Shown here piece after piece: positions 4,899 through 46,198 of a DNA stretch of 52,229 bases. The DNA lies in NCBI GenBank assembly GCA_943704425.1, contig CALSCP010002206.1, forward strand, positions 1 to 52,229. The letters are read 5' to 3'. A program made the translations under genes and the position numbers. The stretch comes from Ministeria vibrans ATCC 50519. Lineage: Eukaryota > Protista > Filasterea. Each line of letters begins with the position of its first letter. Positions within the stretch are counted from its first letter, which is position 1. The notes under the pieces were generated by a model, which saw only the letters and a list, made by a program, of their open reading frames with translations, was not told the DNA's origin and made no database searches.

Positions 4899-5728
4899 GG
4901 AGAAAGCAAAAAGAAAGCAGCAATGGAGTTTAGTATAATTATTATTGTTTATTAATTTCGGTACCTGTCTTTGTTTTTTTTTGTTTTTTTTTTCTTTGCT
5001 TGCTAGGTCGGATCTGTTCAATGGTGCATTTGAGCACATTGCCAGTACCATTGCTGAGGTGTATAAGGATTTGACGACGACTTCCAAGGAGACTATTGGT
5101 GGTCAAGCGTATCTCACGCTCGAGAGACAAGAGGTTGGTGCTGCAAAAAAAAGGAAGACGTTCTTATTTAGTTTTCTTTTGTGCTGTAGGAGCCCTATCT
5201 GCATGGTGTGGTGTACAACGTGAGTCCACCCAAGAAGCGATTTCGTGACATGGATCAGTTGTCCGGAGGTGAAAAGACTGTGGCTGCGCTGGCGCTTCTC
5301 TTTGCCATTCATAGGTACAGTCTTGCTTAGCGAGTTCAGCTCGCACACAAAAATATTTACTTATTACTAATAATAATATTACGTCTCGATGGTATATTGT
5401 AGTTACCAACCAGCACCATTTTTTGTGCTTGACGAAATTGATGCGGCTCTCGACAATGCCAACGTCAACTTGGTACACACTCATCAATGCAAACGTGAAC
5501 ATGCGCTCACTAGGTTGCAAAATTTCTCATTCATCATAGGTTGCCAACTACATTCGTCGACGAACCGGTCGTAACTTTCAGTGCATTGTGATTTCGCTCA
5601 AGGACACGTTCTACGAGAAGGCCGAGGGTCTCGTGGGGATCTACCGTGACCAAAAAACCGACTGCAGTCACACACTCACCTTTGACTTGTCGGCCTATCC
5701 CGAGACCGAAGAAGCCGCTCAATGCTGA
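410..5728 (+). CDS. SMC1: Structural maintenance of chromosomes protein 1 (cohesin subunit), multi-exon
   Basis: N-terminus FKSYQG and Walker A GPNGAG|[13 protein letters not shown] split by intron 519-850. Long coiled coils. Hinge [13 protein letters not shown]...TFIPLD...[18 protein letters not shown]-terminal [29 protein letters not shown] and [16 protein letters not shown] at 5726-5728. Confidence 0.96.
2218..2400. repeat. Intronic (CAAAT)n/(CAAAA)n pentanucleotide microsatellite
   Basis: Directly visible tandem array inside an SMC1 intron. Confidence 0.9.
4646..4893. repeat. (AG)n microsatellite in an SMC1 intron, interrupted by an assembly gap
   Basis: AG repeats flank the N run at 4729-4840. 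Confidence 0.9.
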
Positions 5729-5793
5729 AGCTTTTTTTTTCCCCTCTTTCATTATACAGCAACTTGTTTTTTGTTTTGTTATTACATTGATTC

Positions 5794-8700
5794 TCAGAGG
5801 ATCACACACACTTTGGATTCTTCTGGGTCGCCCTTTGGAGGACTGTTGACAGAACCGAGGGGTGGCAGGGGCACACGATCACCTCGCTCGACAGGAGGCT
5901 CGCCGAAGCGAGTGTCACTGTTGCACACAATAAGATGTGTCATGGTCACGTTGGGGAGCGTATCAACGAGCTGTTCCGTTTCAGTTACGGGTGTTTCGCT
6001 GAAGGAGAGTCGTGTTGAAAAGGGAAAGCCCTAAAAAAAAAAACAAAAAAAAAAAAAAAAAAAAAAAAAAAATAGTGACAAAGTGATGGAGAAATAAACA
6101 AGGCAAGGAGACACACACACAAAATTAGGCGAGGAGGTTTTTAGGAGATCGAATAATCGTTCACGTACCAGTGGACGAGTGTCGGGGTAGCGCATGCCCT
6201 TTGCACCACAAAAGCTGAGCGAGCCACAGTGAGTGCGAGCGTTCAGAGTGTCGATGGCGTTGTCGGTGAAAAAGATAAAAAGTCGGTAGTGGGAGCCGGG
6301 ACGAGTGCCACGCGGCAGGAGCAAGTTTGGAGGCAAACCACACTCACAGAAGCCTGGCGAGACGGTAACGCTGTGCTCCTGTTGGTCAAGCTGATCTTGA
6401 GGACGACGGCGAATCACGGAGGAGTGACGGTCGCGGCGTGAGAAGACGGTGTGCGAGGCGCCCGCAGGAATGTCAACGCGACACTTGTCCATTTCGATCC
6501 AGGCGAGACGATCGTTGGTCTGGTGGAGGAGCGCGAGGAAGAGACGCGCTGTCAAGGAAAGTGGCAGAGCAAGGTCGGAGGCGCCGGGAACGCGGGCGAC
6601 ACGGACGTGCCAAACAAAAGGATCGTGATCAAGGTGCGCAATTTCGAGTTCGCGTTGGGGTTCGCCCAAGGTGGTGTGGAGGACATCCGAGGCAAAGTCG
6701 TTGCGCGCCCAGTCGTCGGTGTCGTTGTTCCATGCGTCGAAACCTTCGGGTGGAGCAATATTGCTGGTGGAGAGCACAATGAGATCACGGGGGCGCACGG
6801 TGACAGGAGGACGCAAACCTGGAATGGAGTCGAGATCGAGGGGTGGCAGAGTGTGATTGACAAGGCGTGCGCCAAAAGTATCAATGTGTTTGTGCCAGCG
6901 CCAGAAGATGGGATCACGCAGAGCGGTGCGAGTGGAAAGCATTGCTCCACCAAAGAGGTTGTGACCGTGGTTGTGGAGATTGCCGTAGAGGGCGCGCCAG
7001 CGGGAGACGGATGGCTCGAGGACATTGCCGAGGAGATTTGCAGTGATAGGTGCACTGTCGTATGGAACACGACCAATGATGCCCGTGTCGATGCTGTGGT
7101 GAAGAGCATCGCGCCACTGTCGCAACTGAATGATGTGAGTGGGAGAGAAGGCGAACCCTTTGGGGCGGGGTCGCATGCGACGGTTGAGACGGTGCTGGTA
7201 GAAGAGATCGCCAAGATGGAGACCGTCAGTGTCGGTCTCATGGTAGTCCCAGGGCACGACGGGGCCCAGGCCGCACGCGAGGCGTTCGCAGTCGTAACGC
7301 GCGAGCATTTGCTGGTGCATGTAAAGAAAAAACTCGCCTTTGCGCTCAAGATGAGGTGCATCTTCTTCGGCACGTGAGCCATACACAATGTGCCAGTGCA
7401 TATGGTGCCAGTTGAGACCCGCATCGCAGCGGTAGTAGTCGACATCCTGCTCGAGAGGCGCCTGTGGATTGGGCGGCGAGCGGCTCAATAGAGCCCCACG
7501 ACCCAACGCGCGCTCTTCCTCGGTGAGCGGACGAGGCTCGGGCAGCGCAAGGCCGCTTGCGCGAGCCTCTGTCGACGACATGATGAATTTGTTGACGGCG
7601 TGCTGAACGAGAGCGGCATTGCGCACCCGTCCTGTGACAAGCAGGGACAGTGCATACTCTAGCCCGGCGCGAGCACTCCCGCCCGTCACAGCCGCATTTG
7701 CAATTGCTCGCTCGAGTGCGAGTGCACGGTCCAATTGTACATCGTCAAACTCACTAAACGCGCCGCTCTCACTGTCCTCGACCTTCGACGACTCATCATC
7801 GTCCTCCTCCTCATCAAAGAACGTCTGGAAGATCTCGTCGACTACTTTGTGTAGACTTTCAGCACTCGCAGACTCGTCCATGAGTTCCCCGCTCTGGAGC
7901 ATTGTGAGAAACTGCTTGCGAAGGGTTACCAGAGAGGCGTCGGGCACACCATGGACAAGACCAAGCTGAGCAAGAGGCCCGTCGACTGGGTGATCGCTGA
8001 CGTGGCCAGCGCTCGATGCAAGGCGGATCAGTTGCGCCGACTGTTGACTCTGCGCGAGTGGCTCCTCAACGTGAGTGGCGCTTGTAGTTGATGTCTCGCT
8101 GTCGTTTGCGAGTGCAATAAGATGCAGGATTTTAAGACGTTGGAGTGAGAGCTGAGCGTAGAGAAGAGCGCGCACGGGAGCCCAATGGTCGTGGGAAATG
8201 AGCGAGAGAGCATCATTGACAAGAGAGAGTGCGCGCATAAGTGACTCTGCGTCCAGAAGTGCTGGCGCATGTGCAGATGTGTGTAAATCAGAGGTTGCAC
8301 TGGTGGATGTGCGGCGGGAGTGGTGAGTGGAATGACGGAGTGGAGAAGAGAGCGCGTTCGCGAGGATGAGAGCAAAGTAGACTGCGTGTGTGCGTGTGGT
8401 GAGATCCGATGTGGTGGCAATGGAGTAGAGGAGAGCGCGAGCGGGTTCGAAGGAGGGCGCAGGAGAACCAGCAAGCGCTATGAACTCGCCTGTTTGAGTA
8501 TCATAAGAGGGCACAGATGATAATGAAGAAGAAGAAGAAACGGTGGGGAAGAGCGGATGGGGGTCTGCAGATGCGACGGTGACTATGGCGGGTTCGGGGG
8601 TGACGAGGGTCCCCTGTGGAGTGTGGAGGGCCACGGTGATGCGGTACGTGCCTGGGGCGGCAAAGTAGAAGCCATGAGCGCCGTACGAGAGTGGTAGGAG

Positions 8701-10557
8701 CACCGAGTGACGGTTTGCGCCCGACTGGATGGCAGACGGTGTGGCGGCTTTGAGACGCAGTGGCTGCTGAGCGACACTGCTCTCAATCATCGACTCGAAG
8801 CGCACTGTGTTGGTGGTGGTGGTGGAATTTGAAGTCCGGTCTTCATCGTCATTGTTGTTGTTGTTGGTGGTGGTGGTGGTAGTGGTGGAGTTAATGTTGG
8901 GAATGTGTGTGATGAGGATGACGAGGGAGTCGTCGTTGAGCGAAGGAACTGAAGGCAGATCGAGCGCATGTCGAGTGTGTGTGTTGCGCACGCGCAGACT
9001 CAGTAGGATGGGCTCGCCTTGAGCGCACGGAGACACGGGAGCACGAAGACGAAGTTGAGCACGATGGGAGAGAGACGGGGAGGGCGGGGGAAGAATCGGG
9101 GGCAGGGATGAAGTAGTGGCGTCGGCAGCCCAGGTAGAGGCGGGCGCTCCTGGCTGGAGCCAAGCACGACGGCCGTGGCGCAGAAAGCGCAGTTCGGCGG
9201 GGGCGAATTGCCATTGAAAGTCGGTGAAGAAGGCGCCGGGCGTGTGACGTTGCTGATCGTAGCGCCAGGGGTAGTTCATGAAAGTGAGTTGAGTTGAGGC
9301 CGGCTGCGCCATCGCATTGTGGGTCTTGTGAGGGCTCCACGAGTGCTGCAGGTTGAGTGTGTGGCCGAGTTCGTGGACAAATGTGTGGAGCAGGTGGCGT
9401 CGGGCCATGTCTGTCTCGAGGGTTGTGTAAGGGGTGTTGCCGTCGCGTGTGACGCGGTGAGCGGCACGCAGGAGAGGGTGGTCGAGAAAAATGGCAAAGC
9501 CGAGACGGCGTTTGTTGTCGAACATTGTGCCGGCGATCCGTGCGTTGCGATGGCGCGACGCGAGCAACGCCCACACGTGCCATTGCGAGTCGTTGAAGAG
9601 CACGTCGGCTGCACTAGTAGTAGTACTAGTAGTAGTGTGTCCCTCGGTGCGAGCAGTGGTGGTGTTGTGGCCGACTTGGCGCTGCACGGTCACTGCGCCA
9701 GTCTTAATGCGCGAGTGAAAGTGCTCGAGCATTGACTGATGCAGCTCGGCGTCGGTCCAGTCTGAGGTGGGATCGGGGTCTTCGAGCGAGTTGCAGTGCT
9801 CTGTGTCGATAACCAGGTCGATACCTGCAGCGGCCAGCACGTCTTGCACCCCAAGTGTGGTGTGGTGGCGACCTGAGGTGGACGTTGCCCAGGGCAACTC
9901 GAGCGGAAGGTGCGCATCGTGATCGACTTCGAGAAGAATTCGACGGAAAAAGGGACTTTTAAAGCGGCAGTGCCACTCGGTGGAGGTACCATTGCCAGCC
10001 GACGTAAAGATGGCGGTGGCACGGCCGCTTGCGGCGGCAGGCGCAAACGAGAGCGTCAAGAGACCGAGGGGCGCGTAGGCAGCGTCAATCAATGCCGCGT
10101 CGCCACTCAAGAGAGCCTGATCGCCATCTTCGAGCGCGTAGCACTGACCCATCACAATACCATTGGCGGGTGCGTAGGGCGGCAAAGCGGGCGCGGGCTG
10201 CACTGCGCTATCACGACGCGCAAAAGGAACAATCCACGATGTGGGGGGCGACGAGGGTGTACTCAGGACGTCGGCGCTCATCATAAATAGCGGTGCGGAC
10301 GCAACGCCAGCGCCCAAAGACGCATGCTGGATGGTGTCCACGTCGACACGCAGTATTATGAGCTGGCCGTCGTCAGACTCGCCGTGATAGACGCCCGAGA
10401 GGGAAGACGACGACGCGGTTGCTAGGCGACCGCGTTGTTGTTGCGTTGCCAGCGACGACGACGATCGTCCAGCCTTTGCAGGTTGACGCTTCTCTTTAAG
10501 TGTCGACATTTGGCGGGTTGCCAACGGGACTGAGGTTGACGGAGAAGAGGACGACAT
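5794..10557 (-). CDS. ~1541-aa fusion of a metzincin-like zinc metallopeptidase and an arthropod-type hemocyanin/prophenoloxidase (type-3 copper) module, ending in a CaaX box
   Basis: Exon 10557-6169, GT-AG intron 6168-6031, exon 6030-5794. Protease: HELGHTLNLQH (HExxHxxxxxH) and a Met-turn-like FMNYP. CuA: LNWHHMHWH and RKGEFFLYMHQQMLARYDCERL. CuB: YGNLHNHGHN and LRDPIFWRWHKHID. Hemocyanin_C-like: WIEMDK, FCECGLPPNLLLPRG, SFCG..YPDTRPL|GFPF. Ends ...EESKVCVIL*. Confidence 0.88.
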
Positions 10558-10559
10558 TC

Positions 10560-10611
10560 AATAACAATGATAAATAATAATAATAATAATAAATTAATAA
10601 TAATAATAATA

Positions 10612-10653
<42 letters not shown>

Positions 10654-10670
10654 TTAATTATTATTACTCG
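10560..10670. repeat. (TAA)n/(TTA)n microsatellite upstream of the prophenoloxidase-like gene
   Basis: Directly visible. Confidence 0.85.
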
Positions 10671-10929
10671 TCGTATTATGAAAAATTCAATAATAATGGT
10701 AAATTATTTGGAAAAAATTCTAGCTAGTGATCTGTGAGAGGGAAAAAGTGCCGCAGTGCAAACGTCCCGTTGACTGCATAGTCTGTCCTGTGATTCCGTT
10801 TAAATTATAGTTATCCGACAAACTCAAACGATGCATAATGCGTCAGTGATCGCCCACTGATAATAAATTAGTGAATAATAATTATTATAATTATTATATT
10901 TTTATTGTGCTTGTGCTCATGAAACAAAA

Positions 10930-13900
10930 CTACACCCCACTGCCATCACGAAACAACAGAATGTCGCCATCGTTGCGCGTCTCGTCCCAGTCATTCCAGA
11001 TGCGCCCCACTAGCAGCCCTTGCCACCTGTTCTTCATCCGACGACACAGCTCCACCGCACTAATCACCGTCTCGCCAGGACGGAACGCCTTCTTCTGCGC
11101 TCCAAGTGCCTCCACCAGCATCCGCGTCATCTGCGTCTCGTCATTCCATGCAAATGCCGACGCGCTGTTCAGTGAGCTGGCCATCATCTGTCGCGCATAG
11201 CCCGGCACGGGCTTGACACTCGCGCGCATCGTCAGGTCCCCATCCGCACTCACCAGTGCCCCCGAATTGCAGAAGTCACACACCACCAGAATGTTGCATC
11301 CGCGCCAGTGGGCCTGCTCCTGTAACACCCCCGCCAGTGTCTTCAAACTAAACCCCGACACAAGATCGTCGATCCAGCGTGCGTCGCTGAGAATCAGTCC
11401 ACGGCTTCGGTCCTCCGCACCATGCCCAATCAGGTGGACCACCAGCAACGACGCCTTGGACTTGCCACACGTCGCGCTGAGCTTCGCTGCAGCCTCCGCA
11501 ATAGTATCCATGGTGACTCTCGCAGTGGTGACTTGGTCTGTGACCGTCTCGACAGCAAACTTGCGGTCCTCCCACAGTGTCTTGAGCTTCGACACACTCT
11601 TAAGAACACCAGGTAAATCAGGACAGTTCGCCAACTGCAGGTTGCTTGACGATTGGTACCGACTCACACCCACAATCAGTGCAGCTGCGTGCGTGTACGC
11701 CGATGTTCCTCCAGCACCTACAAAGAAAACATAAACAATTGTCAGATTTAAACTGAATAATATTTCAGATTTGACCTGCTTGATTGCACCACCACAGCTC
11801 AAGACGTTCGTTGCACTGTCGTTCGCCAGCGTGTCCCATCAACTCCAGATTCACCCGCCCCACCTCACGGTGCTCCTCAGGTGCCCCCGCCACATGCTCA
11901 GCCTCAAACAACGGTCGCGTCGGGTCAAACGGGTGCGCTGGCACGACCACTGCTCTCCCTCCACGCCATCCCCACCGCAGCGACACAGTCGACGAGCACA
12001 CCCGCTCAATCAGCGCATCCACCGTGTCACGCACATTCTCCGCAGGTGTGTCCGCATACAGTTCCACACGCACAAACGCCTCGCCCGTGTTCAGTCGCAG
12101 TCGCACCGGCACCATCCCATTGCCCTTCATCAGAAGCACATTCGTGCACCGCTGAGTCGCTTGGATCGCCGCATTCCCCACACTCTCCCGCCACAGTGCA
12201 ACCACCAGCAAGTGGAAAGTCGCCAGTGACACCGGCAACACCGCACCACCCACCATCTGGTACAGGAACAACTGCGCCGGTCGATCAACAGCTTGCTCGA
12301 CAAACGGTGCGTCGTCGGGCAGCAGCATCGGCACAAGAAGTCGGTCGTCGTGTCGGAACACCAGACTCAGGTGCTCAAGGGTGCGCAGGAACGCCGCAGG
12401 ATCAACCACGTCGGCACCCGCCAACAGTGGCTGTGTCTTGGCCAGTGGTGCAGCTGCCTCCCACACAAGCCACTGTGCCACGTCAAATGGGAATCCGGCT
12501 TCGGGACGTTGTCGTGTCGCGTCCAAAGCAGTCAACAGACGCACGGTGCGATTGAGATCCTTTGCACACCCTGCCTCCTCCACCTGCGCCAGCATTCCGC
12601 GCGCCCGCTCGCTCTTCGCCCGTCCCCATCGTGCCATCACCACCGAACACAGCAGTTCAAGCGCCGCAATCAGTCGAGGCACATCAAACACAACCATGTC
12701 GGAGTCAGCGAGCGTCGCACGGTCCACACGACTCACCAGAATGTCCGCAGAGTTCTCCAGGTACGGAATCACTCCATCGTGCAGTGCCGTCGTGTCGGGC
12801 ATCAGGTCGCCCAGTGTGATCTGTGGCGCGTCGTTGAGCTCGAGTGTTGGCAACTCACGCACTGGGCACATCAGCTGGACGTTGCCCATCCGCGCCCATC
12901 GTCCAATCAGGTCCTGTGCACACACATACTCAAGCGGCACAGGTCGTGGACGCACCGCCGAGTGCAGTGCCGTGCTGACCGCAGCGAGTCCCAGGCCCTT
13001 GGCACTGCCCACCTGGAAGAAGGGCACACTCGGTGTCGATGGCGGTCGGATGAGGTGCGGCCCAAGCACAGGCACAACGAGACGACGCATCTCGCGCGCC
13101 ACCAGTTGCAGCAGATCGCACGGAACGGTGTCGTCAGTGAACGTGTCGATGTGTGTGCCCACAATGAGAACGCGAAAGTGCGATGACTGCGTGGTGGGCA
13201 CTTGGTGCGCGATGAGGTGCGCCCATTTCGACACCGTGTCGTACTGGCGTTGAGCCGCAAGAAGACCACTAGCCATGGCGGACAGGTCAAAGACGACGAC
13301 GTAGACGGACTCGTTGCCCATGAACAGTGCAGGAAGCGAGTCAAACATCGACTCACCTAAACACATCAACGAGAACGGATGTCAGAAGAAGAAAAAGAAA
13401 TAGATTGGGCTTTGTGCAATATACGAACCTGCAAAGTCAAACGAGTCCATGTCAACGTGCTCTTCGCGCAGTTCCGTCTCCAGCACAGACTGCACAATCT
13501 CGAGGGTGTCTGATGTGGCAGCGATGGTGGGTGTGGGCGTTGGTGGTGGTGGAGAGGGAGCGACACTGGGTGTAGGGGGTGAAAGGTTCGACACAGTCTT
13601 CTTCACTTCGGTTGATGGTCCTGCCTCGTCAGTTGAATCGACGTCGTCGTGTTTCTCCTCTGCGATATCCTCCTCTTCCTCCACCGTCTCCATTGCCACC
13701 ATGCGCTCGCCAATGAGACTGGCCAAATGAAACTCCTCCTGCGGCACCGCCTTGAAGTAGCCCGTCTCGCCATCAAAGACTATTCGCATGCGGTGCATTC
13801 GAGTGGCGACTGAGCGGTCGTCTTTGCCGGGCAGTGTATCGTCTTGCAGTGCCGCAAGCAGTGCTGTCTTGCCTGCCTCGGTTGCACCCAGAAACAGCAG

Positions 13901-15522
13901 TTTGATCGAGTGCGAGATGACACACCCGCGTGCCATTGCCGAAAGGAACGCCTTCTTGTGACTCGACTCAGTGGGCAGCTCACTAAAACAACAATATAGA
14001 GAAACGGGATAGGTAATTGTGTGTGAAGGAAATGATTGTTGTTGTGTGTGCTGAGTGTACGGAATGAGGTCAGTGATGGGAAAGTGCTCTGTGGTGTTGT
14101 CTGTAAAGTGCACGATGAGTGTTTGGTGGTCCGTTGAGAATTCCAGTTTGCAGAGTGTTCTACAGAGTAAAACAATAATAAGAAAGAAATTTGTTTTGAC
14201 GTTCATACTTTGAGTTGAGTTTCAGAGGAAATGAGTTGATCTGCAGTCCCTTTGCAATGGTCCACACTTTGATTGTCGTGTCGTGCGATCCACTGAAGAG
14301 TGTTGTGCCGTCAGATGAAAAGTGGACTGTTTTGACATAACTACGAGTGAAATGTGTGAAAAGGGAATTGAATAGACTGACGTCATACTGTGAATGTTCA
14401 GTGAAAGTGAAGAGACACTCTCCCGTCTGACTGTCCCACACTTTCACTGTCTTGTCGTATGATCCACTCACTATTGTAGTTCCGTCGGGTGAGAATTCGG
14501 CTGATGTGACGCGACTGAAATCAAAAGAAGAGTCAAAATGATTTTGGAGTTCCTTTCGTATTACTCTGAGTGTCCAGTGAATGTGCGGATTATCTTTCCA
14601 GTGTCAAACCAATGCAGTGCAATGGTTTTGTCAGTTGAAGCAGTGAGCACTTGTTTGCCATCAAATGAAAATGAAATGGAGTTGATGTAATCCCTAAACG
14701 AAACAGAAACAGGAATGAGACTCAAAGGAATATGAAGAAATGTTCTTACGAATGAGCACGCTCAAAGGATCGCACAAACTGTGCAGAGTGAGTGTCCCAC
14801 ACACTCAGTCCATACTTCTTTTGTCCAAGAATGTGCAATCCATTGGGGGAAAATGACACTGCACATTGAAAACTGGAAAAGATATTCAACAAATGAAATC
14901 ACACTTCAAATGACAATCACTTACAATGGTTCGCATTGAATGGTGTGTTCGCACAGTCCACTCACAAGTGACCACACTCGAATGGTTTTGTCATCTGAAC
15001 CACTCAGTGCTTTGGTTCCATCAGAGGAAATGTCCACTGAATTAACCCACCTATCAAACGGAAATCAGTCCAATGGCACTCATTGCAAATGGTAAATCGT
15101 ACTTTGAATGTCCTTCCAGAATGAACAGACACGTTCCAGTGCGAATATCCCACACTCGGACTGTCTGGTCAAACGATCCACTCACTATCTTCGTTCCATC
15201 AGACGACACTTTGAGAGACGGCACCCCGCTGAAAACACACTCAAGTCAGAAAACAATCCACAAACATACCCAATTCTTACTTTGTGTGTCCTTTGAGTCT
15301 CTTGACGCATTTCTGCTCAGTGAGTGACCACAGCACAATCTCCTTCACCACTGAAGCAAAGACCACATCCCCCCTCACTGTCAGACTATAAACATCGTTC
15401 TTGTCCTTCACCGTCGCAATGGAGTGCGCAATGTGCTGTGTTCCCTCTTCGCACTTCCGAAAGAGCGCAACTTCATTCTTATGCACAAATGCGACTGTCT
15501 TTCCCTTCTGAGCAAATGCCAT
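10930..15522 (-). CDS. ~1341-aa Roco-family protein: WD40 repeats, Roc GTPase, COR-like region and caspase-like (peptidase C14) domain
   Basis: Exons 15522-15281, 15228-15103, 15050-14925, 14872-14750, 14693-14565, 14514-14389, 14340-14209, 14159-14061, 13982-13429, 13356-11776, 11717-10930 give 4026 nt in one frame with all GT-AG introns. WD40: [46 protein letters not shown]. Roc: [17 protein letters not shown]|[19 protein letters not shown]14-like: [28 protein letters not shown]. The 5' end could extend further upstream. Confidence 0.85.
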
Positions 15523-15735
15523 GTTCTACGACACGAGAGAGAGGAGTGAGGAGTGACAACTGGATCACAGCAAACAGAGGCACACACACAAGGGAACGTG
15601 GTTCTATGAGGCCTCAGCGATCAACTGAGTGCCAACCAATGAGAACTCTCTGTCTCTCCACTCAAAGTCCCTTTCAAACAAACCAAAACAAACTGACTCA
15701 CAAACAACGACTGATCAAACAACGAGAGCGCATCA

Positions 15736-39581: not shown

Positions 39582-46198
<6,617 letters not shown>

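What the first reader, a model, noticed from the sequence alone, without database searches (positions are those of the whole stretch)
5794..10557. Metzincin-like peptidase fused to an arthropod-type prophenoloxidase/hemocyanin: possible self-activating phenoloxidase
Seen: a single uninterrupted exon carries HELGHTLNLQH plus FMNYP (about 9270-9375) and a full hemocyanin M and C module (about 7470-6169). All six copper histidines are present, as are the Glu in LGNVLEPS and the Asn after the first CuB His. No signal peptide is evident. Known: that Glu/Asn pair is associated with monophenolase activity in type-3 copper enzymes, and proPOs normally need a separate activating protease. I do not recognise this fusion. 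Inference: the protease may activate the oxidase in cis.
Basis: partly seen in the sequence, partly recalled or inferred. Interest (0 to 1): 0.85.

Follow-up and report, generated by a model that had tools for sequence, protein, structure and literature searches.

The report
Metzincin protease fused to prophenoloxidase
A real two-exon gene in a marine single-celled relative of animals joins a zinc protease with intact catalytic residues to a complete arthropod-type copper phenoloxidase; sea squirts and acorn worms carry the same unannotated fusion, so the oxidase may be switched on by its own protease.

Summary
On the minus strand, exon 1 (10557-6169), a GT..AG intron (6168-6031) and exon 2 (6030-5794) encode 1541 aa.

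- **N-terminal module, residues ~70-895.** It belongs to an uncharacterised ~700-aa cytosolic bacterial family with no Pfam model. It contains a metzincin-fold catalytic domain (Z 11 to adamalysin II). The motif HExxHxxNxxH and the MNY Met-turn are invariant.
- **C-terminal unit, residues 896-1463 plus exon 2.** It is a full three-domain arthropod-type hemocyanin/prophenoloxidase (Z 34 to Limulus hemocyanin II). All six copper histidines and the domain-I plug Phe (F937, Limulus Phe49) are present.
- **Loop between them.** An acidic, low-confidence loop (912-933) lies just before the plug.

The fusion is not unique. The same architecture is found in Ciona, Clavelina, Styela, Ptychodera and several marine metagenome eukaryote contigs, all labelled 'uncharacterized'. 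Trees of both halves put the window protein as sister to these, which points to one old fusion. Bacteria independently fused a subtilisin (S8) to the same oxidase.

Activation in cis is plausible but untested. RNA covers only parts of the oxidase half. The Glu/Asn pair is also present in oxygen-carrying hemocyanins, so it does not indicate monophenolase activity. I found no paper describing the architecture. Other notes in this scan cover the same stretch.

The parts
5794..10557 (-). Whole gene, start codon to stop codon; 1541 aa after splicing
   Evidence: ORF and translation; splice; single copy in the 29.7-Mb assembly
6169..10557 (-). Exon 1, residues 1-1463
   Evidence: Uninterrupted frame; colinear with 13 homologues of 1225-1546 aa
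6031..6168 (-). Intron, GT..AG, with a long T-run before the acceptor
   Evidence: Sequence read. The frame and the conserved G(F/Y)PF motif resume exactly at 6030
5794..6030 (-). Exon 2: 78 aa plus stop. It holds the end of hemocyanin domain III and a short tail ending in CVIL (CaaX-like, nt 5808-5797)
   Evidence: Aligns to Ptychodera P0179 residues 1284-1338, E 1e-5. An RNA-type contig covers 5838-6017
9961..10350 (-). N-terminal beta-rich domain of the N-module, residues ~70-199. It starts with the family motif SGxY...L.L.VD
   Evidence: Local phmmer matches to family members over residues ~170-285. Family consensus. AF2 strands at model residues 16-65
9151..9960 (-). Metzincin-fold catalytic domain, residues ~200-469
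   Evidence: VIA-align: adamalysin II 1dth Z 11.0 (174 aa, rmsd 4.2). ADAMTS-5, TACE, archaemetzincin and ulilysin give Z 9.5-10.9. Weak Pfam M10 and Reprolysin_4 hits
9343..9375 (-). Zinc-binding motif HELGHTLNLQH (H395, E396, H399, H405)
   Evidence: The three His are invariant in 80 family members and E396 is nearly so. All four are invariant in 14 fusion proteins. Tunicates have the canonical G at position 8
9268..9282 (-). Met-turn region FMNYP (M427, N428)
   Evidence: M and N are nearly invariant in the family and invariant in the fusions
8569..9096 (-). Beta-sandwich domain, residues ~488-663, with a Thr/Asn-rich low-complexity insert
   Evidence: AF2 models. VIA-align Z 8-9.3 to transglutaminase C-barrels, the AsaP1 prodomain and the BsuPI inhibitor; fold level only
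7873..8499 (-). Helical repeat domain, residues ~687-895 (TPR-like; weak matches)
   Evidence: AF2 helices. Z about 8-9 to TPR proteins, below what is convincing for helical folds
7456..7872 (-). Hemocyanin domain I, residues ~896-1034. It includes the acidic low-confidence loop 912-933 (nt 7824-7759) and the FSEF plug motif 934-937 (nt 7758-7747)
   Evidence: The family profile aligns to Limulus hemocyanin II from residue 25, and F937 aligns with Phe49. Model residues 633-1200 align to 1lla residues 2-596. pLDDT is 50-58 over the loop and 89 after it
6877..7455 (-). Hemocyanin domain II (copper domain), residues 1035-1227. CuA ligands are H1052, H1056, H1081; CuB ligands are H1195, H1199, H1222
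   Evidence: Pfam PF00372, E 6.7e-31. The histidines are invariant
6169..6639 (-). Hemocyanin domain III (Ig-like), residues 1307-1463, continuing into exon 2. It has the conserved Cys pairs C1404/C1406 and C1444/C1450
   Evidence: Pfam PF03723, E 2.1e-11; PDB alignments

Best explanation
**Shown**
- This is a genuine single gene of a holozoan-like marine protist. It encodes a cytosolic 1541-aa protein.
- The first ~900 residues are an N-module made of a beta domain, a metzincin-fold zinc peptidase, a beta-sandwich and a helical repeat. The module is homologous to an uncharacterised ~700-aa cytosolic bacterial family.
- The rest is a complete arthropod-type (beta-subclass) hemocyanin/prophenoloxidase unit with domains I-III.
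- The architecture is old and conserved. It occurs in tunicates, a hemichordate and other marine eukaryote contigs.

**Inferred mechanism**
- The oxidase is made latent. Its dicopper site is covered by domain I through the conserved Phe937, the equivalent of Limulus Phe49.
- The fused peptidase controls its release. The most likely route is a cut in or near the exposed acidic loop 912-933, just upstream of the plug. I infer that this loop is positionally equivalent to the loop that carries the activating cleavage site in insect proPO.
- The cut could be made in cis or between neighbouring subunits of an oligomer.
- The freed oxidase would then oxidise phenols to quinones for defence or cross-linking.
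- The CVIL end, found only in this organism, would tether the protein to a membrane by prenylation.
For: - **One gene.** A 1508-codon frame plus a spliced 78-aa exon whose product aligns with homologues.
- **Native to the contig.** GC matches the neighbouring coding regions. The same contig holds intron-bearing eukaryotic genes, including a 10-repeat cadherin.
- **Peptidase.** Metzincin fold at Z 9.5-11 over ~175 residues; the top 16 matches are all metzincins. HExxHxxNxxH and the Met-turn are conserved in 80 relatives and invariant in 14 fusions.
- **Oxidase.** Z 34.0 to Limulus hemocyanin II (479 aa, rmsd 2.9, chain residues 2-596) and Z 31.9 to Manduca proPO. The six His, E1181 and N1196 are invariant. 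F937 aligns to Limulus Phe49. PMC7828413 describes Phe49 as controlling access of phenolic substrates.
- **Loop.** pLDDT is 50-58 over residues 914-933 and 89 from the FSEF motif onward.
- **Conserved architecture.** Ptychodera, Ciona, Clavelina, Styela and nine metagenome proteins carry both halves.
- **Phylogeny.** In the hemocyanin tree the 15 rows of the fusion clade group together (SH-aLRT 97), with the window protein as their sister. The N-module tree gives the same placement for the window protein relative to the hemichordate and metagenome members; the tunicate rows fell below that tree's inclusion thresholds.
- **Convergence.** Bacteria independently built Peptidase_S8 + Hemocyanin_M + Hemocyanin_C, with the same domain order and the plug motif retained.
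- **Cytosolic.** 0 of 142 family members has a hydrophobic N-terminus.
Against: - No cleavage, protease activity or oxidase activity has been shown for any member.
- I could not inspect model coordinates, so I do not know whether loop 912-933 can reach the peptidase cleft. pTM is only 0.69.
- The loop sequence is not conserved between this protein and the animal homologues.
- In bacteria the N-module family is never next to a hemocyanin gene (0 of 80 loci). It often follows a small conserved partner gene instead, so its ancestral substrate is something else.
- RNA evidence covers only 5838-6017 and 6982-7234. There is none for the protease half.
- The trees are quick searches rooted at the midpoint. 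The window protein sits on a long branch with deviant composition.
Confidence: 0.5

Rival explanations
1. The protein is bifunctional but uncoupled. The peptidase cuts other substrates, as its bacterial relatives presumably do. The oxidase is unlocked by something else, such as lipids, a conformational change or another protease. On this reading the fusion only co-localises two effectors.
For: Bacterial relatives work without any hemocyanin nearby and have their own small partner gene. The loop before the plug is not conserved in sequence. Hemichordates also have N-module gene models without the oxidase (P0001-P0003).
Against: Two unrelated protease types were fused in the same order to the same oxidase in distant lineages. 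Both halves appear to have been inherited together since before the split between this protist and animals. Both facts are easier to explain by functional coupling.
Confidence: 0.28
2. The N-module is a regulatory or sensor scaffold whose peptidase no longer cuts. It holds the oxidase closed until a ligand binds the helical or beta-sandwich domains.
For: There are large non-catalytic domains of unknown role (beta-sandwich, helical repeat). Position 8 of the zinc motif is N instead of the canonical G in most members.
Against: The three zinc histidines are invariant, and the catalytic Glu and the Met-turn are nearly invariant, in 80 relatives; all are invariant in 14 fusions. That is the pattern of an active enzyme. 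Tunicate members keep the canonical G.
Confidence: 0.1
3. The hemocyanin unit is not a phenoloxidase here. It could be an oxygen binder or store, or catalyse other chemistry, like the hemocyanin-fold enzyme AsqI of fungal quinolone synthesis.
For: AsqI is a strong structural match, Z 28.
Against: All six copper ligands are invariant. The clade lies among putative oxidases of chytrids, bacteria and tunicates rather than with arthropod oxygen carriers. A cytosolic protein of a single cell has little need for an oxygen carrier (inference).
Confidence: 0.09
4. Artefact: two adjacent genes, or foreign DNA, were read as one gene.
For: RNA contigs cover only the oxidase half.
Against: There is no stop in 1508 codons. 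Thirteen homologues from other organisms are colinear over both halves. DNA contigs of several independent runs carry the stretch unchanged. The contig carries typical eukaryotic genes.
Confidence: 0.03

Closest known systems
[quoted passage not shown]
   Same: All three domains I-III, six copper histidines, the domain-I plug Phe, the conserved Cys pairs in domain III and the absence of a signal peptide. Beta-subclass members are already known from amoebozoans, fungi, a sponge, a hemichordate and tunicates (PMC3658974).
   Different: About 900 extra residues, including a zinc peptidase, precede domain I. No clip-protease-type Arg-Phe site is evident. The sequence lies in a separate clade from arthropod proteins. 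This organism's copy has a CaaX-like end.
Metzincin clan of zinc endopeptidases (adamalysin/ADAM, archaemetzincin, ulilysin)
   Same: The fold (Z 9.5-11), the HExxHxxxxxH zinc site and a Met-turn.
   Different: Asn replaces the usual Gly at motif position 8, except in tunicates. It is cytosolic. It is embedded between a beta domain, a beta-sandwich and a helical repeat. Scores are below the threshold of every Pfam and NCBIfam peptidase family.
Uncharacterised ~700-aa bacterial family (e.g. Echinicola vietnamensis Echvi_3014, Sinorhizobium medicae GOD90_20285)
   Same: Colinear homology over residues ~170-750 with the same invariant residues.
   Different: The bacterial proteins stand alone. 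They often sit behind a small conserved gene of ~100 aa. They are never beside a hemocyanin gene in 80 loci.
Bacterial Peptidase_S8-hemocyanin fusions (e.g. Leisingera sp. D0M16 'S8 family serine peptidase', 1234 aa)
   Same: A protease lies N-terminal to a plug-bearing Hemocyanin_M + Hemocyanin_C unit in one polypeptide.
   Different: The protease is a serine protease, not a zinc peptidase. It is an independent fusion in a separate clade. It is also uncharacterised.
Latent plant and fungal polyphenol oxidases that are unlocked by removal of a shielding domain
   Same: The logic is the same: a plug residue from a neighbouring domain keeps a type-3 copper site closed until proteolysis. This rests on my own knowledge and was not tested here.
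   Different: Those enzymes are alpha-subclass. Their shield is C-terminal and they carry no protease domain.

Membership tests
Arthropod-type hemocyanin superfamily (beta-subclass type-3 copper) | Hemocyanin_M copper domain above Pfam's threshold | tested here: met
   PF00372: 107.9 bits against a cut-off of 20.8
Arthropod-type hemocyanin superfamily (beta-subclass type-3 copper) | Six copper-binding histidines in the CuA and CuB sites | tested here: met
   H1052, H1056, H1081, H1195, H1199 and H1222 align with the Limulus ligand positions and are invariant in 14 homologues
Arthropod-type hemocyanin superfamily (beta-subclass type-3 copper) | Ig-like domain III (Hemocyanin_C) | tested here: met
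   PF03723: 44.1 bits against a cut-off of 26.4. It continues into exon 2
Arthropod-type hemocyanin superfamily (beta-subclass type-3 copper) | Helical domain I with the plug Phe | tested here: met
   Pfam Hemocyanin_N was not detected. However, the profile aligns from Limulus residue 25 with F937 on Phe49, and the model aligns to chain residues 2-596 at Z 34
Arthropod prophenoloxidase (zymogen of the clip-protease cascade) | Activating Arg-Phe cleavage site in the N-terminal loop, cut by a clip-domain serine protease | tested here: not met
   The equivalent loop 912-933 is acidic and has no Arg-Phe. The position of the insect site is from my own knowledge
Arthropod prophenoloxidase (zymogen of the clip-protease cascade) | Phenol-oxidising activity after activation | not testable with these tools
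   Needs an enzyme assay
Metzincin clan (MA(M)) | HExxHxxGxxH/D zinc motif | tested here: met
   HELGHTLNLQH has all three His and the Glu, but Asn in place of Gly. Tunicate homologues have Gly
Metzincin clan (MA(M)) | Conserved Met-turn below the zinc site | tested here: met
   M427 in FMNYP is nearly invariant in 80 relatives and invariant in the fusions. Its position under the zinc could not be checked without coordinates
Metzincin clan (MA(M)) | Metzincin fold | tested here: met
   Z 11.0 to 1dth over 174 aa. The top 16 matches are all metzincins
Peptidase families M10 (matrixin) and M12B (reprolysin) | Score above the family's curated threshold | tested here: not met
   M10: 15.7 bits against 24. 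Reprolysin_4: 14.8 bits against 22. NCBIfam archaemetzincin: 13.2 bits against 145
Known anti-phage defence proteins (PADLOC) | Match to any PADLOC model | tested here: not met
   No hit for the N-module or for five bacterial relatives

The most novel reading that the evidence does not exclude
This is a self-contained protease-prophenoloxidase zymogen that arose once before animals diverged from their unicellular relatives. It still operates in tunicates and hemichordates, where oxidase activation has been attributed to separate serine proteases. On this reading the fused metzincin is the built-in activator, and bacteria reached the same solution with a subtilisin.
Probability: 0.3. Interest if true: 0.8.

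Novelty: new variant of a known kind. Interest (0 to 1): 0.62.

Why it matters
Phenoloxidases are central to invertebrate immunity, wound sealing and pigment formation. How they are kept silent and then switched on is known in detail only for arthropods, where a separate serine-protease cascade does it.

A conserved single-chain protease-oxidase in a unicellular relative of animals, in sea squirts and in acorn worms would offer a much simpler activation route that one recombinant protein could test. A 2017 review of ascidian immunity assumes activation by serine proteases (PMC5465252), so that view may need revisiting.

The finding also gives a first functional handle on a widespread bacterial family of cytosolic metzincin-like proteins that has no annotation.

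Tried and rejected
- **Word-indexed search, residues 200-1000.** It found nothing. The exhaustive HMMER search was needed to find the family.
- **NCBIfam and PADLOC.** Neither gave a usable hit for the N-module.
- **Foldseek on the 681-residue model.** It gave only weak whole-chain matches to Akkermansia O-glycopeptidases and GH3 enzymes. The domain-level answer came from VIA-align.
- **Rosetta-stone test in bacteria.** No hemocyanin homologue lies within 10 kb of 80 bacterial N-module genes. The small conserved partner gene found there has no counterpart in the fusion proteins.
- **Calls that failed.** Searching the Echinicola and Sinorhizobium genomes for hemocyanin failed because those loci are not in the genome collection.
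- **RNA support.** Only one RNA-type run (X15) held pieces. None spans the intron or the protease half.
- **Algal origin.** Rejected: there is no LHC gene in the assembly.
- **Species name.** Not obtained. The best named SMC1 relative is Capsaspora at 40% identity.
- **Literature.** Searches for the fusion found nothing.
- **Joined exon model.** The joined exon 1 + exon 2 protein was built only inside local scripts, for coordinates, local phmmer and the trees. All database, family and structure tools received exon 1 or exon 2 by reference. Folding or searching the joined model was left out.
Full report
**Gene model**

The minus strand carries an open frame of 1508 codons from the ATG at 10557 to 6031. 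Similarity to hemocyanins stops after residue 1463, where the DNA reads CTG|GTACGT. After a T-rich stretch and an AG at 6031, the frame resumes with GFPF. Joining 6169 to 6030 keeps the frame and gives 1541 aa ending in CVIL, with the stop at 5796-5794. The translation of exon 2 aligns to Ptychodera protein P0179 at residues 1284-1338, directly after its Hemocyanin_C domain (E 1e-5). The homologues have G-Y-P-F at exactly this point. Upstream of the ATG lies AT-rich (ATT)n spacer, and then the end of the neighbouring gene at about 10930.

GC of the gene (0.57-0.59) matches other coding stretches of the window. The gene is single-copy in the 29.7-Mb assembly.

**Transcription**

No listed holder is on record as RNA. 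Of the four runs laid, two (X3, X4) behave as DNA and are identical to the window. One poly(A)-bearing, RNA-type run (X15) has identical contigs at 5838-6017 (exon 2) and 6982-7234 (copper domain). It has none over the protease half or across the intron, where a T-run was skipped by the tool. Transcription of the oxidase half is therefore likely. A single transcript is not shown by reads. It rests on the uninterrupted frame and on colinear homologues.

**C-terminal half**

- Pfam gives Hemocyanin_M at residues 1035-1227 (E 6.7e-31) and Hemocyanin_C at 1307-1463 (E 2.1e-11).
- phmmer against PDB sequences gives scorpion and Limulus hemocyanins and insect prophenoloxidases at E 1e-46 to 1e-32.
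- A profile of 14 fusion proteins aligns to Limulus hemocyanin II from chain residue 25 to 606. The motif F-S-x-F-x-x-x-H-L lies on F46-S-C-F49-H-P-D-H-L, so F937 of the window protein corresponds to Phe49.
- PMC7828413 describes Phe49 of domain 1 as a conserved residue thought to govern oxygen affinity and the access of phenolic substrates.
- An AlphaFold2 model of residues 264-1463 has mean pLDDT 78.4 and pTM 0.69. Its residues 633-1200 (protein 896-1463) superpose on Limulus hemocyanin II residues 2-596 (Z 34.0, rmsd 2.9 Å, 479 aligned, 31% identity) and on Manduca prophenoloxidase (Z 31.9).

All three hemocyanin domains are therefore present. The six copper histidines, E1181, N1196 and the domain-III cysteines are invariant in the 14 fusion proteins. 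E1181 and N1196 are matched by the same residues in the oxygen-carrying Limulus and scorpion proteins, so they cannot be read as a mark of monophenolase activity.

**N-terminal half**

Pfam gives only sub-threshold hits to Peptidase_M10 and Reprolysin_4 around HELGH.

An exhaustive HMMER search of 1.84 billion representatives with residues 1-1000 found 500 relatives at E ≤ 0.001. Most are 650-790 aa long. The named ones are 'hypothetical protein' or 'uncharacterized protein' of Echinicola vietnamensis, Sinorhizobium medicae and three hemichordates. A pattern scan of species genomes confirmed 213 bacterial relatives. They come from Acidobacteriota, Chloroflexota, Actinomycetota, Alphaproteobacteria, Planctomycetota and Bacteroidota.

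Homology is colinear over residues ~170-750. In an 80-sequence alignment, H395, H399, H405 and H461 are invariant. E396, N402, M427 and N428 are nearly so. This gives the family motif HExGHxxNLxH followed by MNY.

The AlphaFold2 model of residues 150-830 has pLDDT 80.1 and pTM 0.86.

- Model residues 51-320 match adamalysin II (Z 11.0, 174 aa, rmsd 4.2), ADAMTS-5, TACE, archaemetzincins and ulilysin (Z 9.5-10.9). The top 16 matches are all metzincins.
- Model residues 339-514 form a beta-sandwich (Z 8-9).
- Model residues 516-681 are helical, with only weak TPR-like matches.

None of 142 relatives with a Met start has a hydrophobic N-terminus, and the window protein has no transmembrane-like stretch. 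The module is thus a cytosolic metzincin-like peptidase of a family that is in neither Pfam, NCBIfam nor PADLOC.

**The junction**

The helical repeat ends at about residue 895. The first helix of hemocyanin domain I follows (899-911). Next comes an acidic loop without predicted structure (912-933; pLDDT 50-58). The confident FSEF plug motif at 934-937 follows it. By the structural alignment, this loop lies where chelicerate hemocyanins have their loop before Phe49. From my own knowledge, insect prophenoloxidases have their activating Arg-Phe cleavage site in that region.

**The same architecture elsewhere**

I searched the hemocyanin part among long proteins. Proteins of 1225-1546 aa came back from Ptychodera flava, Ciona intestinalis, Clavelina lepadiformis and Styela clava, and from nine clusters on ENA metagenome contigs of up to 3.2 Mb. 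All carry the N-module with an HExxHxxxxxH motif. Tunicates have the canonical Gly at position 8. All are colinear with the window protein at 28-32% identity.

One metagenome contig has a RIG-I-like helicase with a CARD region next door, so it is likely animal DNA.

These homologues have a further ~200-aa C-terminal domain that the window protein lacks. None ends in a CaaX box.

- **Hemocyanin tree.** The 15 rows of the fusion clade form one group (SH-aLRT 97), with the window protein as sister to the rest (97). They are apart from arthropod hemocyanins and from the bacterial proteins. One of these rows, P0178, is a truncated model that lacks the catalytic domain.
- **N-module tree.** The window, hemichordate and metagenome proteins group together (88) within bacterial diversity, and the window protein is again sister to the others. 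The tunicate rows fell below the inclusion thresholds.

Both trees are quick searches rooted at the midpoint, and the window protein has a long branch. They fit a single old fusion inherited together but do not prove it.

**Organism**

- The contig also carries a cadherin ORF with at least ten repeats, an SMC1 fragment, a CFAP69-like gene and a Roc-plus-caspase gene.
- The best named SMC1 relative is Capsaspora at 40% identity.
- There is no LHC gene in the assembly.
- The DNA recurs in seawater, algae-culture and biofilm metagenomes.

I read this as a marine, heterotrophic, holozoan-like protist. I could not name the species.

**Independent fusion in bacteria**

Four bacterial proteins of 1158-1234 aa combine Peptidase_S8 (221-538), Hemocyanin_M and Hemocyanin_C in the same order. 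They include Leisingera sp. D0M16 and a Chloroflexi MAG. They form their own clade (SH-aLRT 100). They keep the plug motif, preceded by basic residues, as in RRFSQFD.

**Bacterial context of the N-module**

No hemocyanin homologue lies within 10 kb of 80 bacterial N-module genes. In 18 of about 42 taxonomically diverse loci a small protein lies beside the gene on the same strand, mostly 10-214 bp upstream. Its core is about 100 aa and it has no Pfam match. An HMM of it finds nothing in the fusion proteins. The ancestral job of the peptidase is therefore unrelated to hemocyanin.

**Literature**

Aguilera et al. 2013 (PMC3658974) define the cytosolic beta-subclass. They list members from amoebozoans, fungi, a sponge, Saccoglossus, Ciona and arthropods. 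They found none in Monosiga or Capsaspora and do not mention a protease domain. A 2017 review of tunicate immunity assumes that ascidian proPO is activated by serine proteases (PMC5465252). A 2022 paper on ascidian oxidases likewise mentions no such fusion (PMC9395347). Seven full-text searches found no description of a metzincin-hemocyanin or subtilisin-hemocyanin fusion. The library does not hold most subscription journals. The original CinPO paper was not read, so I could not check whether the CinPO cDNAs are parts of the Ciona fusion gene.

**Reading**

- **Shown:** the gene, its domains, the intact catalytic and copper sites, the plug Phe, the disordered acidic loop, the conserved architecture and the convergent bacterial fusion.
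- **Inferred:** the peptidase unlocks the oxidase by cutting at or near that loop, in cis or between subunits.

The main rival is that the two activities are merely co-delivered.

Read laying received 5001 letters. The spliced protein was assembled only in local scripts.

Noticed in passing
window 5700-5781 (+ strand): An RNA-type contig of 2106 nt ends at 5781 and runs into a poly(A) tail that is not in the genome. A convergent plus-strand gene therefore ends only 13 nt from the stop codon of the fusion gene (5794-5796). The two 3' UTRs must overlap.
   Followed up: partly
window 10930-14206 (- strand): The gene directly upstream has a Roc-like GTPase piece (ORF 13382-14206) and a Peptidase_C14 caspase-like domain (ORF 10930-11802). 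Another note of this scan proposes a link with the oxidase gene. I did not test that link.
   Followed up: no
window 5797-5808 (- strand): The spliced protein ends in CVIL, a CaaX-type prenylation signal. None of the 13 homologues ends this way. They carry an extra ~200-aa C-terminal domain instead.
   Followed up: partly
window 40788-46097 (- strand): A 1769-codon ORF has at least ten cadherin repeats (Pfam E 5.7e-122). This is a marker of holozoan affinity for the organism.
   Followed up: partly
window 10560-10700 and 6031-6082: There is a long (ATT)n/(AAT)n microsatellite in the spacer upstream of the start codon. A T-run of about 50 nt fills the 3' part of the intron. Both break short-read contigs.
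   Followed up: no
L043:9359-9808, L010:9573-9908, L021:1747-2064 and other bacterial loci: In diverse bacteria the ~700-aa metzincin-like gene has a same-strand neighbour gene, mostly 10-214 bp upstream. It encodes a small protein with a conserved core (L-Q-E/D-G-F ... V-N-G) and no Pfam match. It could be a substrate, an inhibitor or a partner.
   Followed up: partly
P0190, P0191, P0184, P0186 (bacterial proteins): Bacteria have uncharacterised fusions of Peptidase_S8 with Hemocyanin_M and Hemocyanin_C. The plug motif is preceded by Arg-Arg. They look like self-contained subtilisin-phenoloxidase zymogens.
   Followed up: partly
P0001, P0002, P0003 (hemichordate proteins): Saccoglossus, Glandiceps and Ptychodera also have gene models of 514-700 aa with only the N-module. 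These nest beside the Ptychodera fusion in the tree. They may be truncated models or secondarily split genes.
   Followed up: no
L001:11726-13792 and 15356-15676: In a metagenome contig the fusion gene lies next to a RIG-I-like helicase (with the RIG-I C-terminal domain) and a weak CARD hit. This suggests the contig comes from an animal.
   Followed up: no
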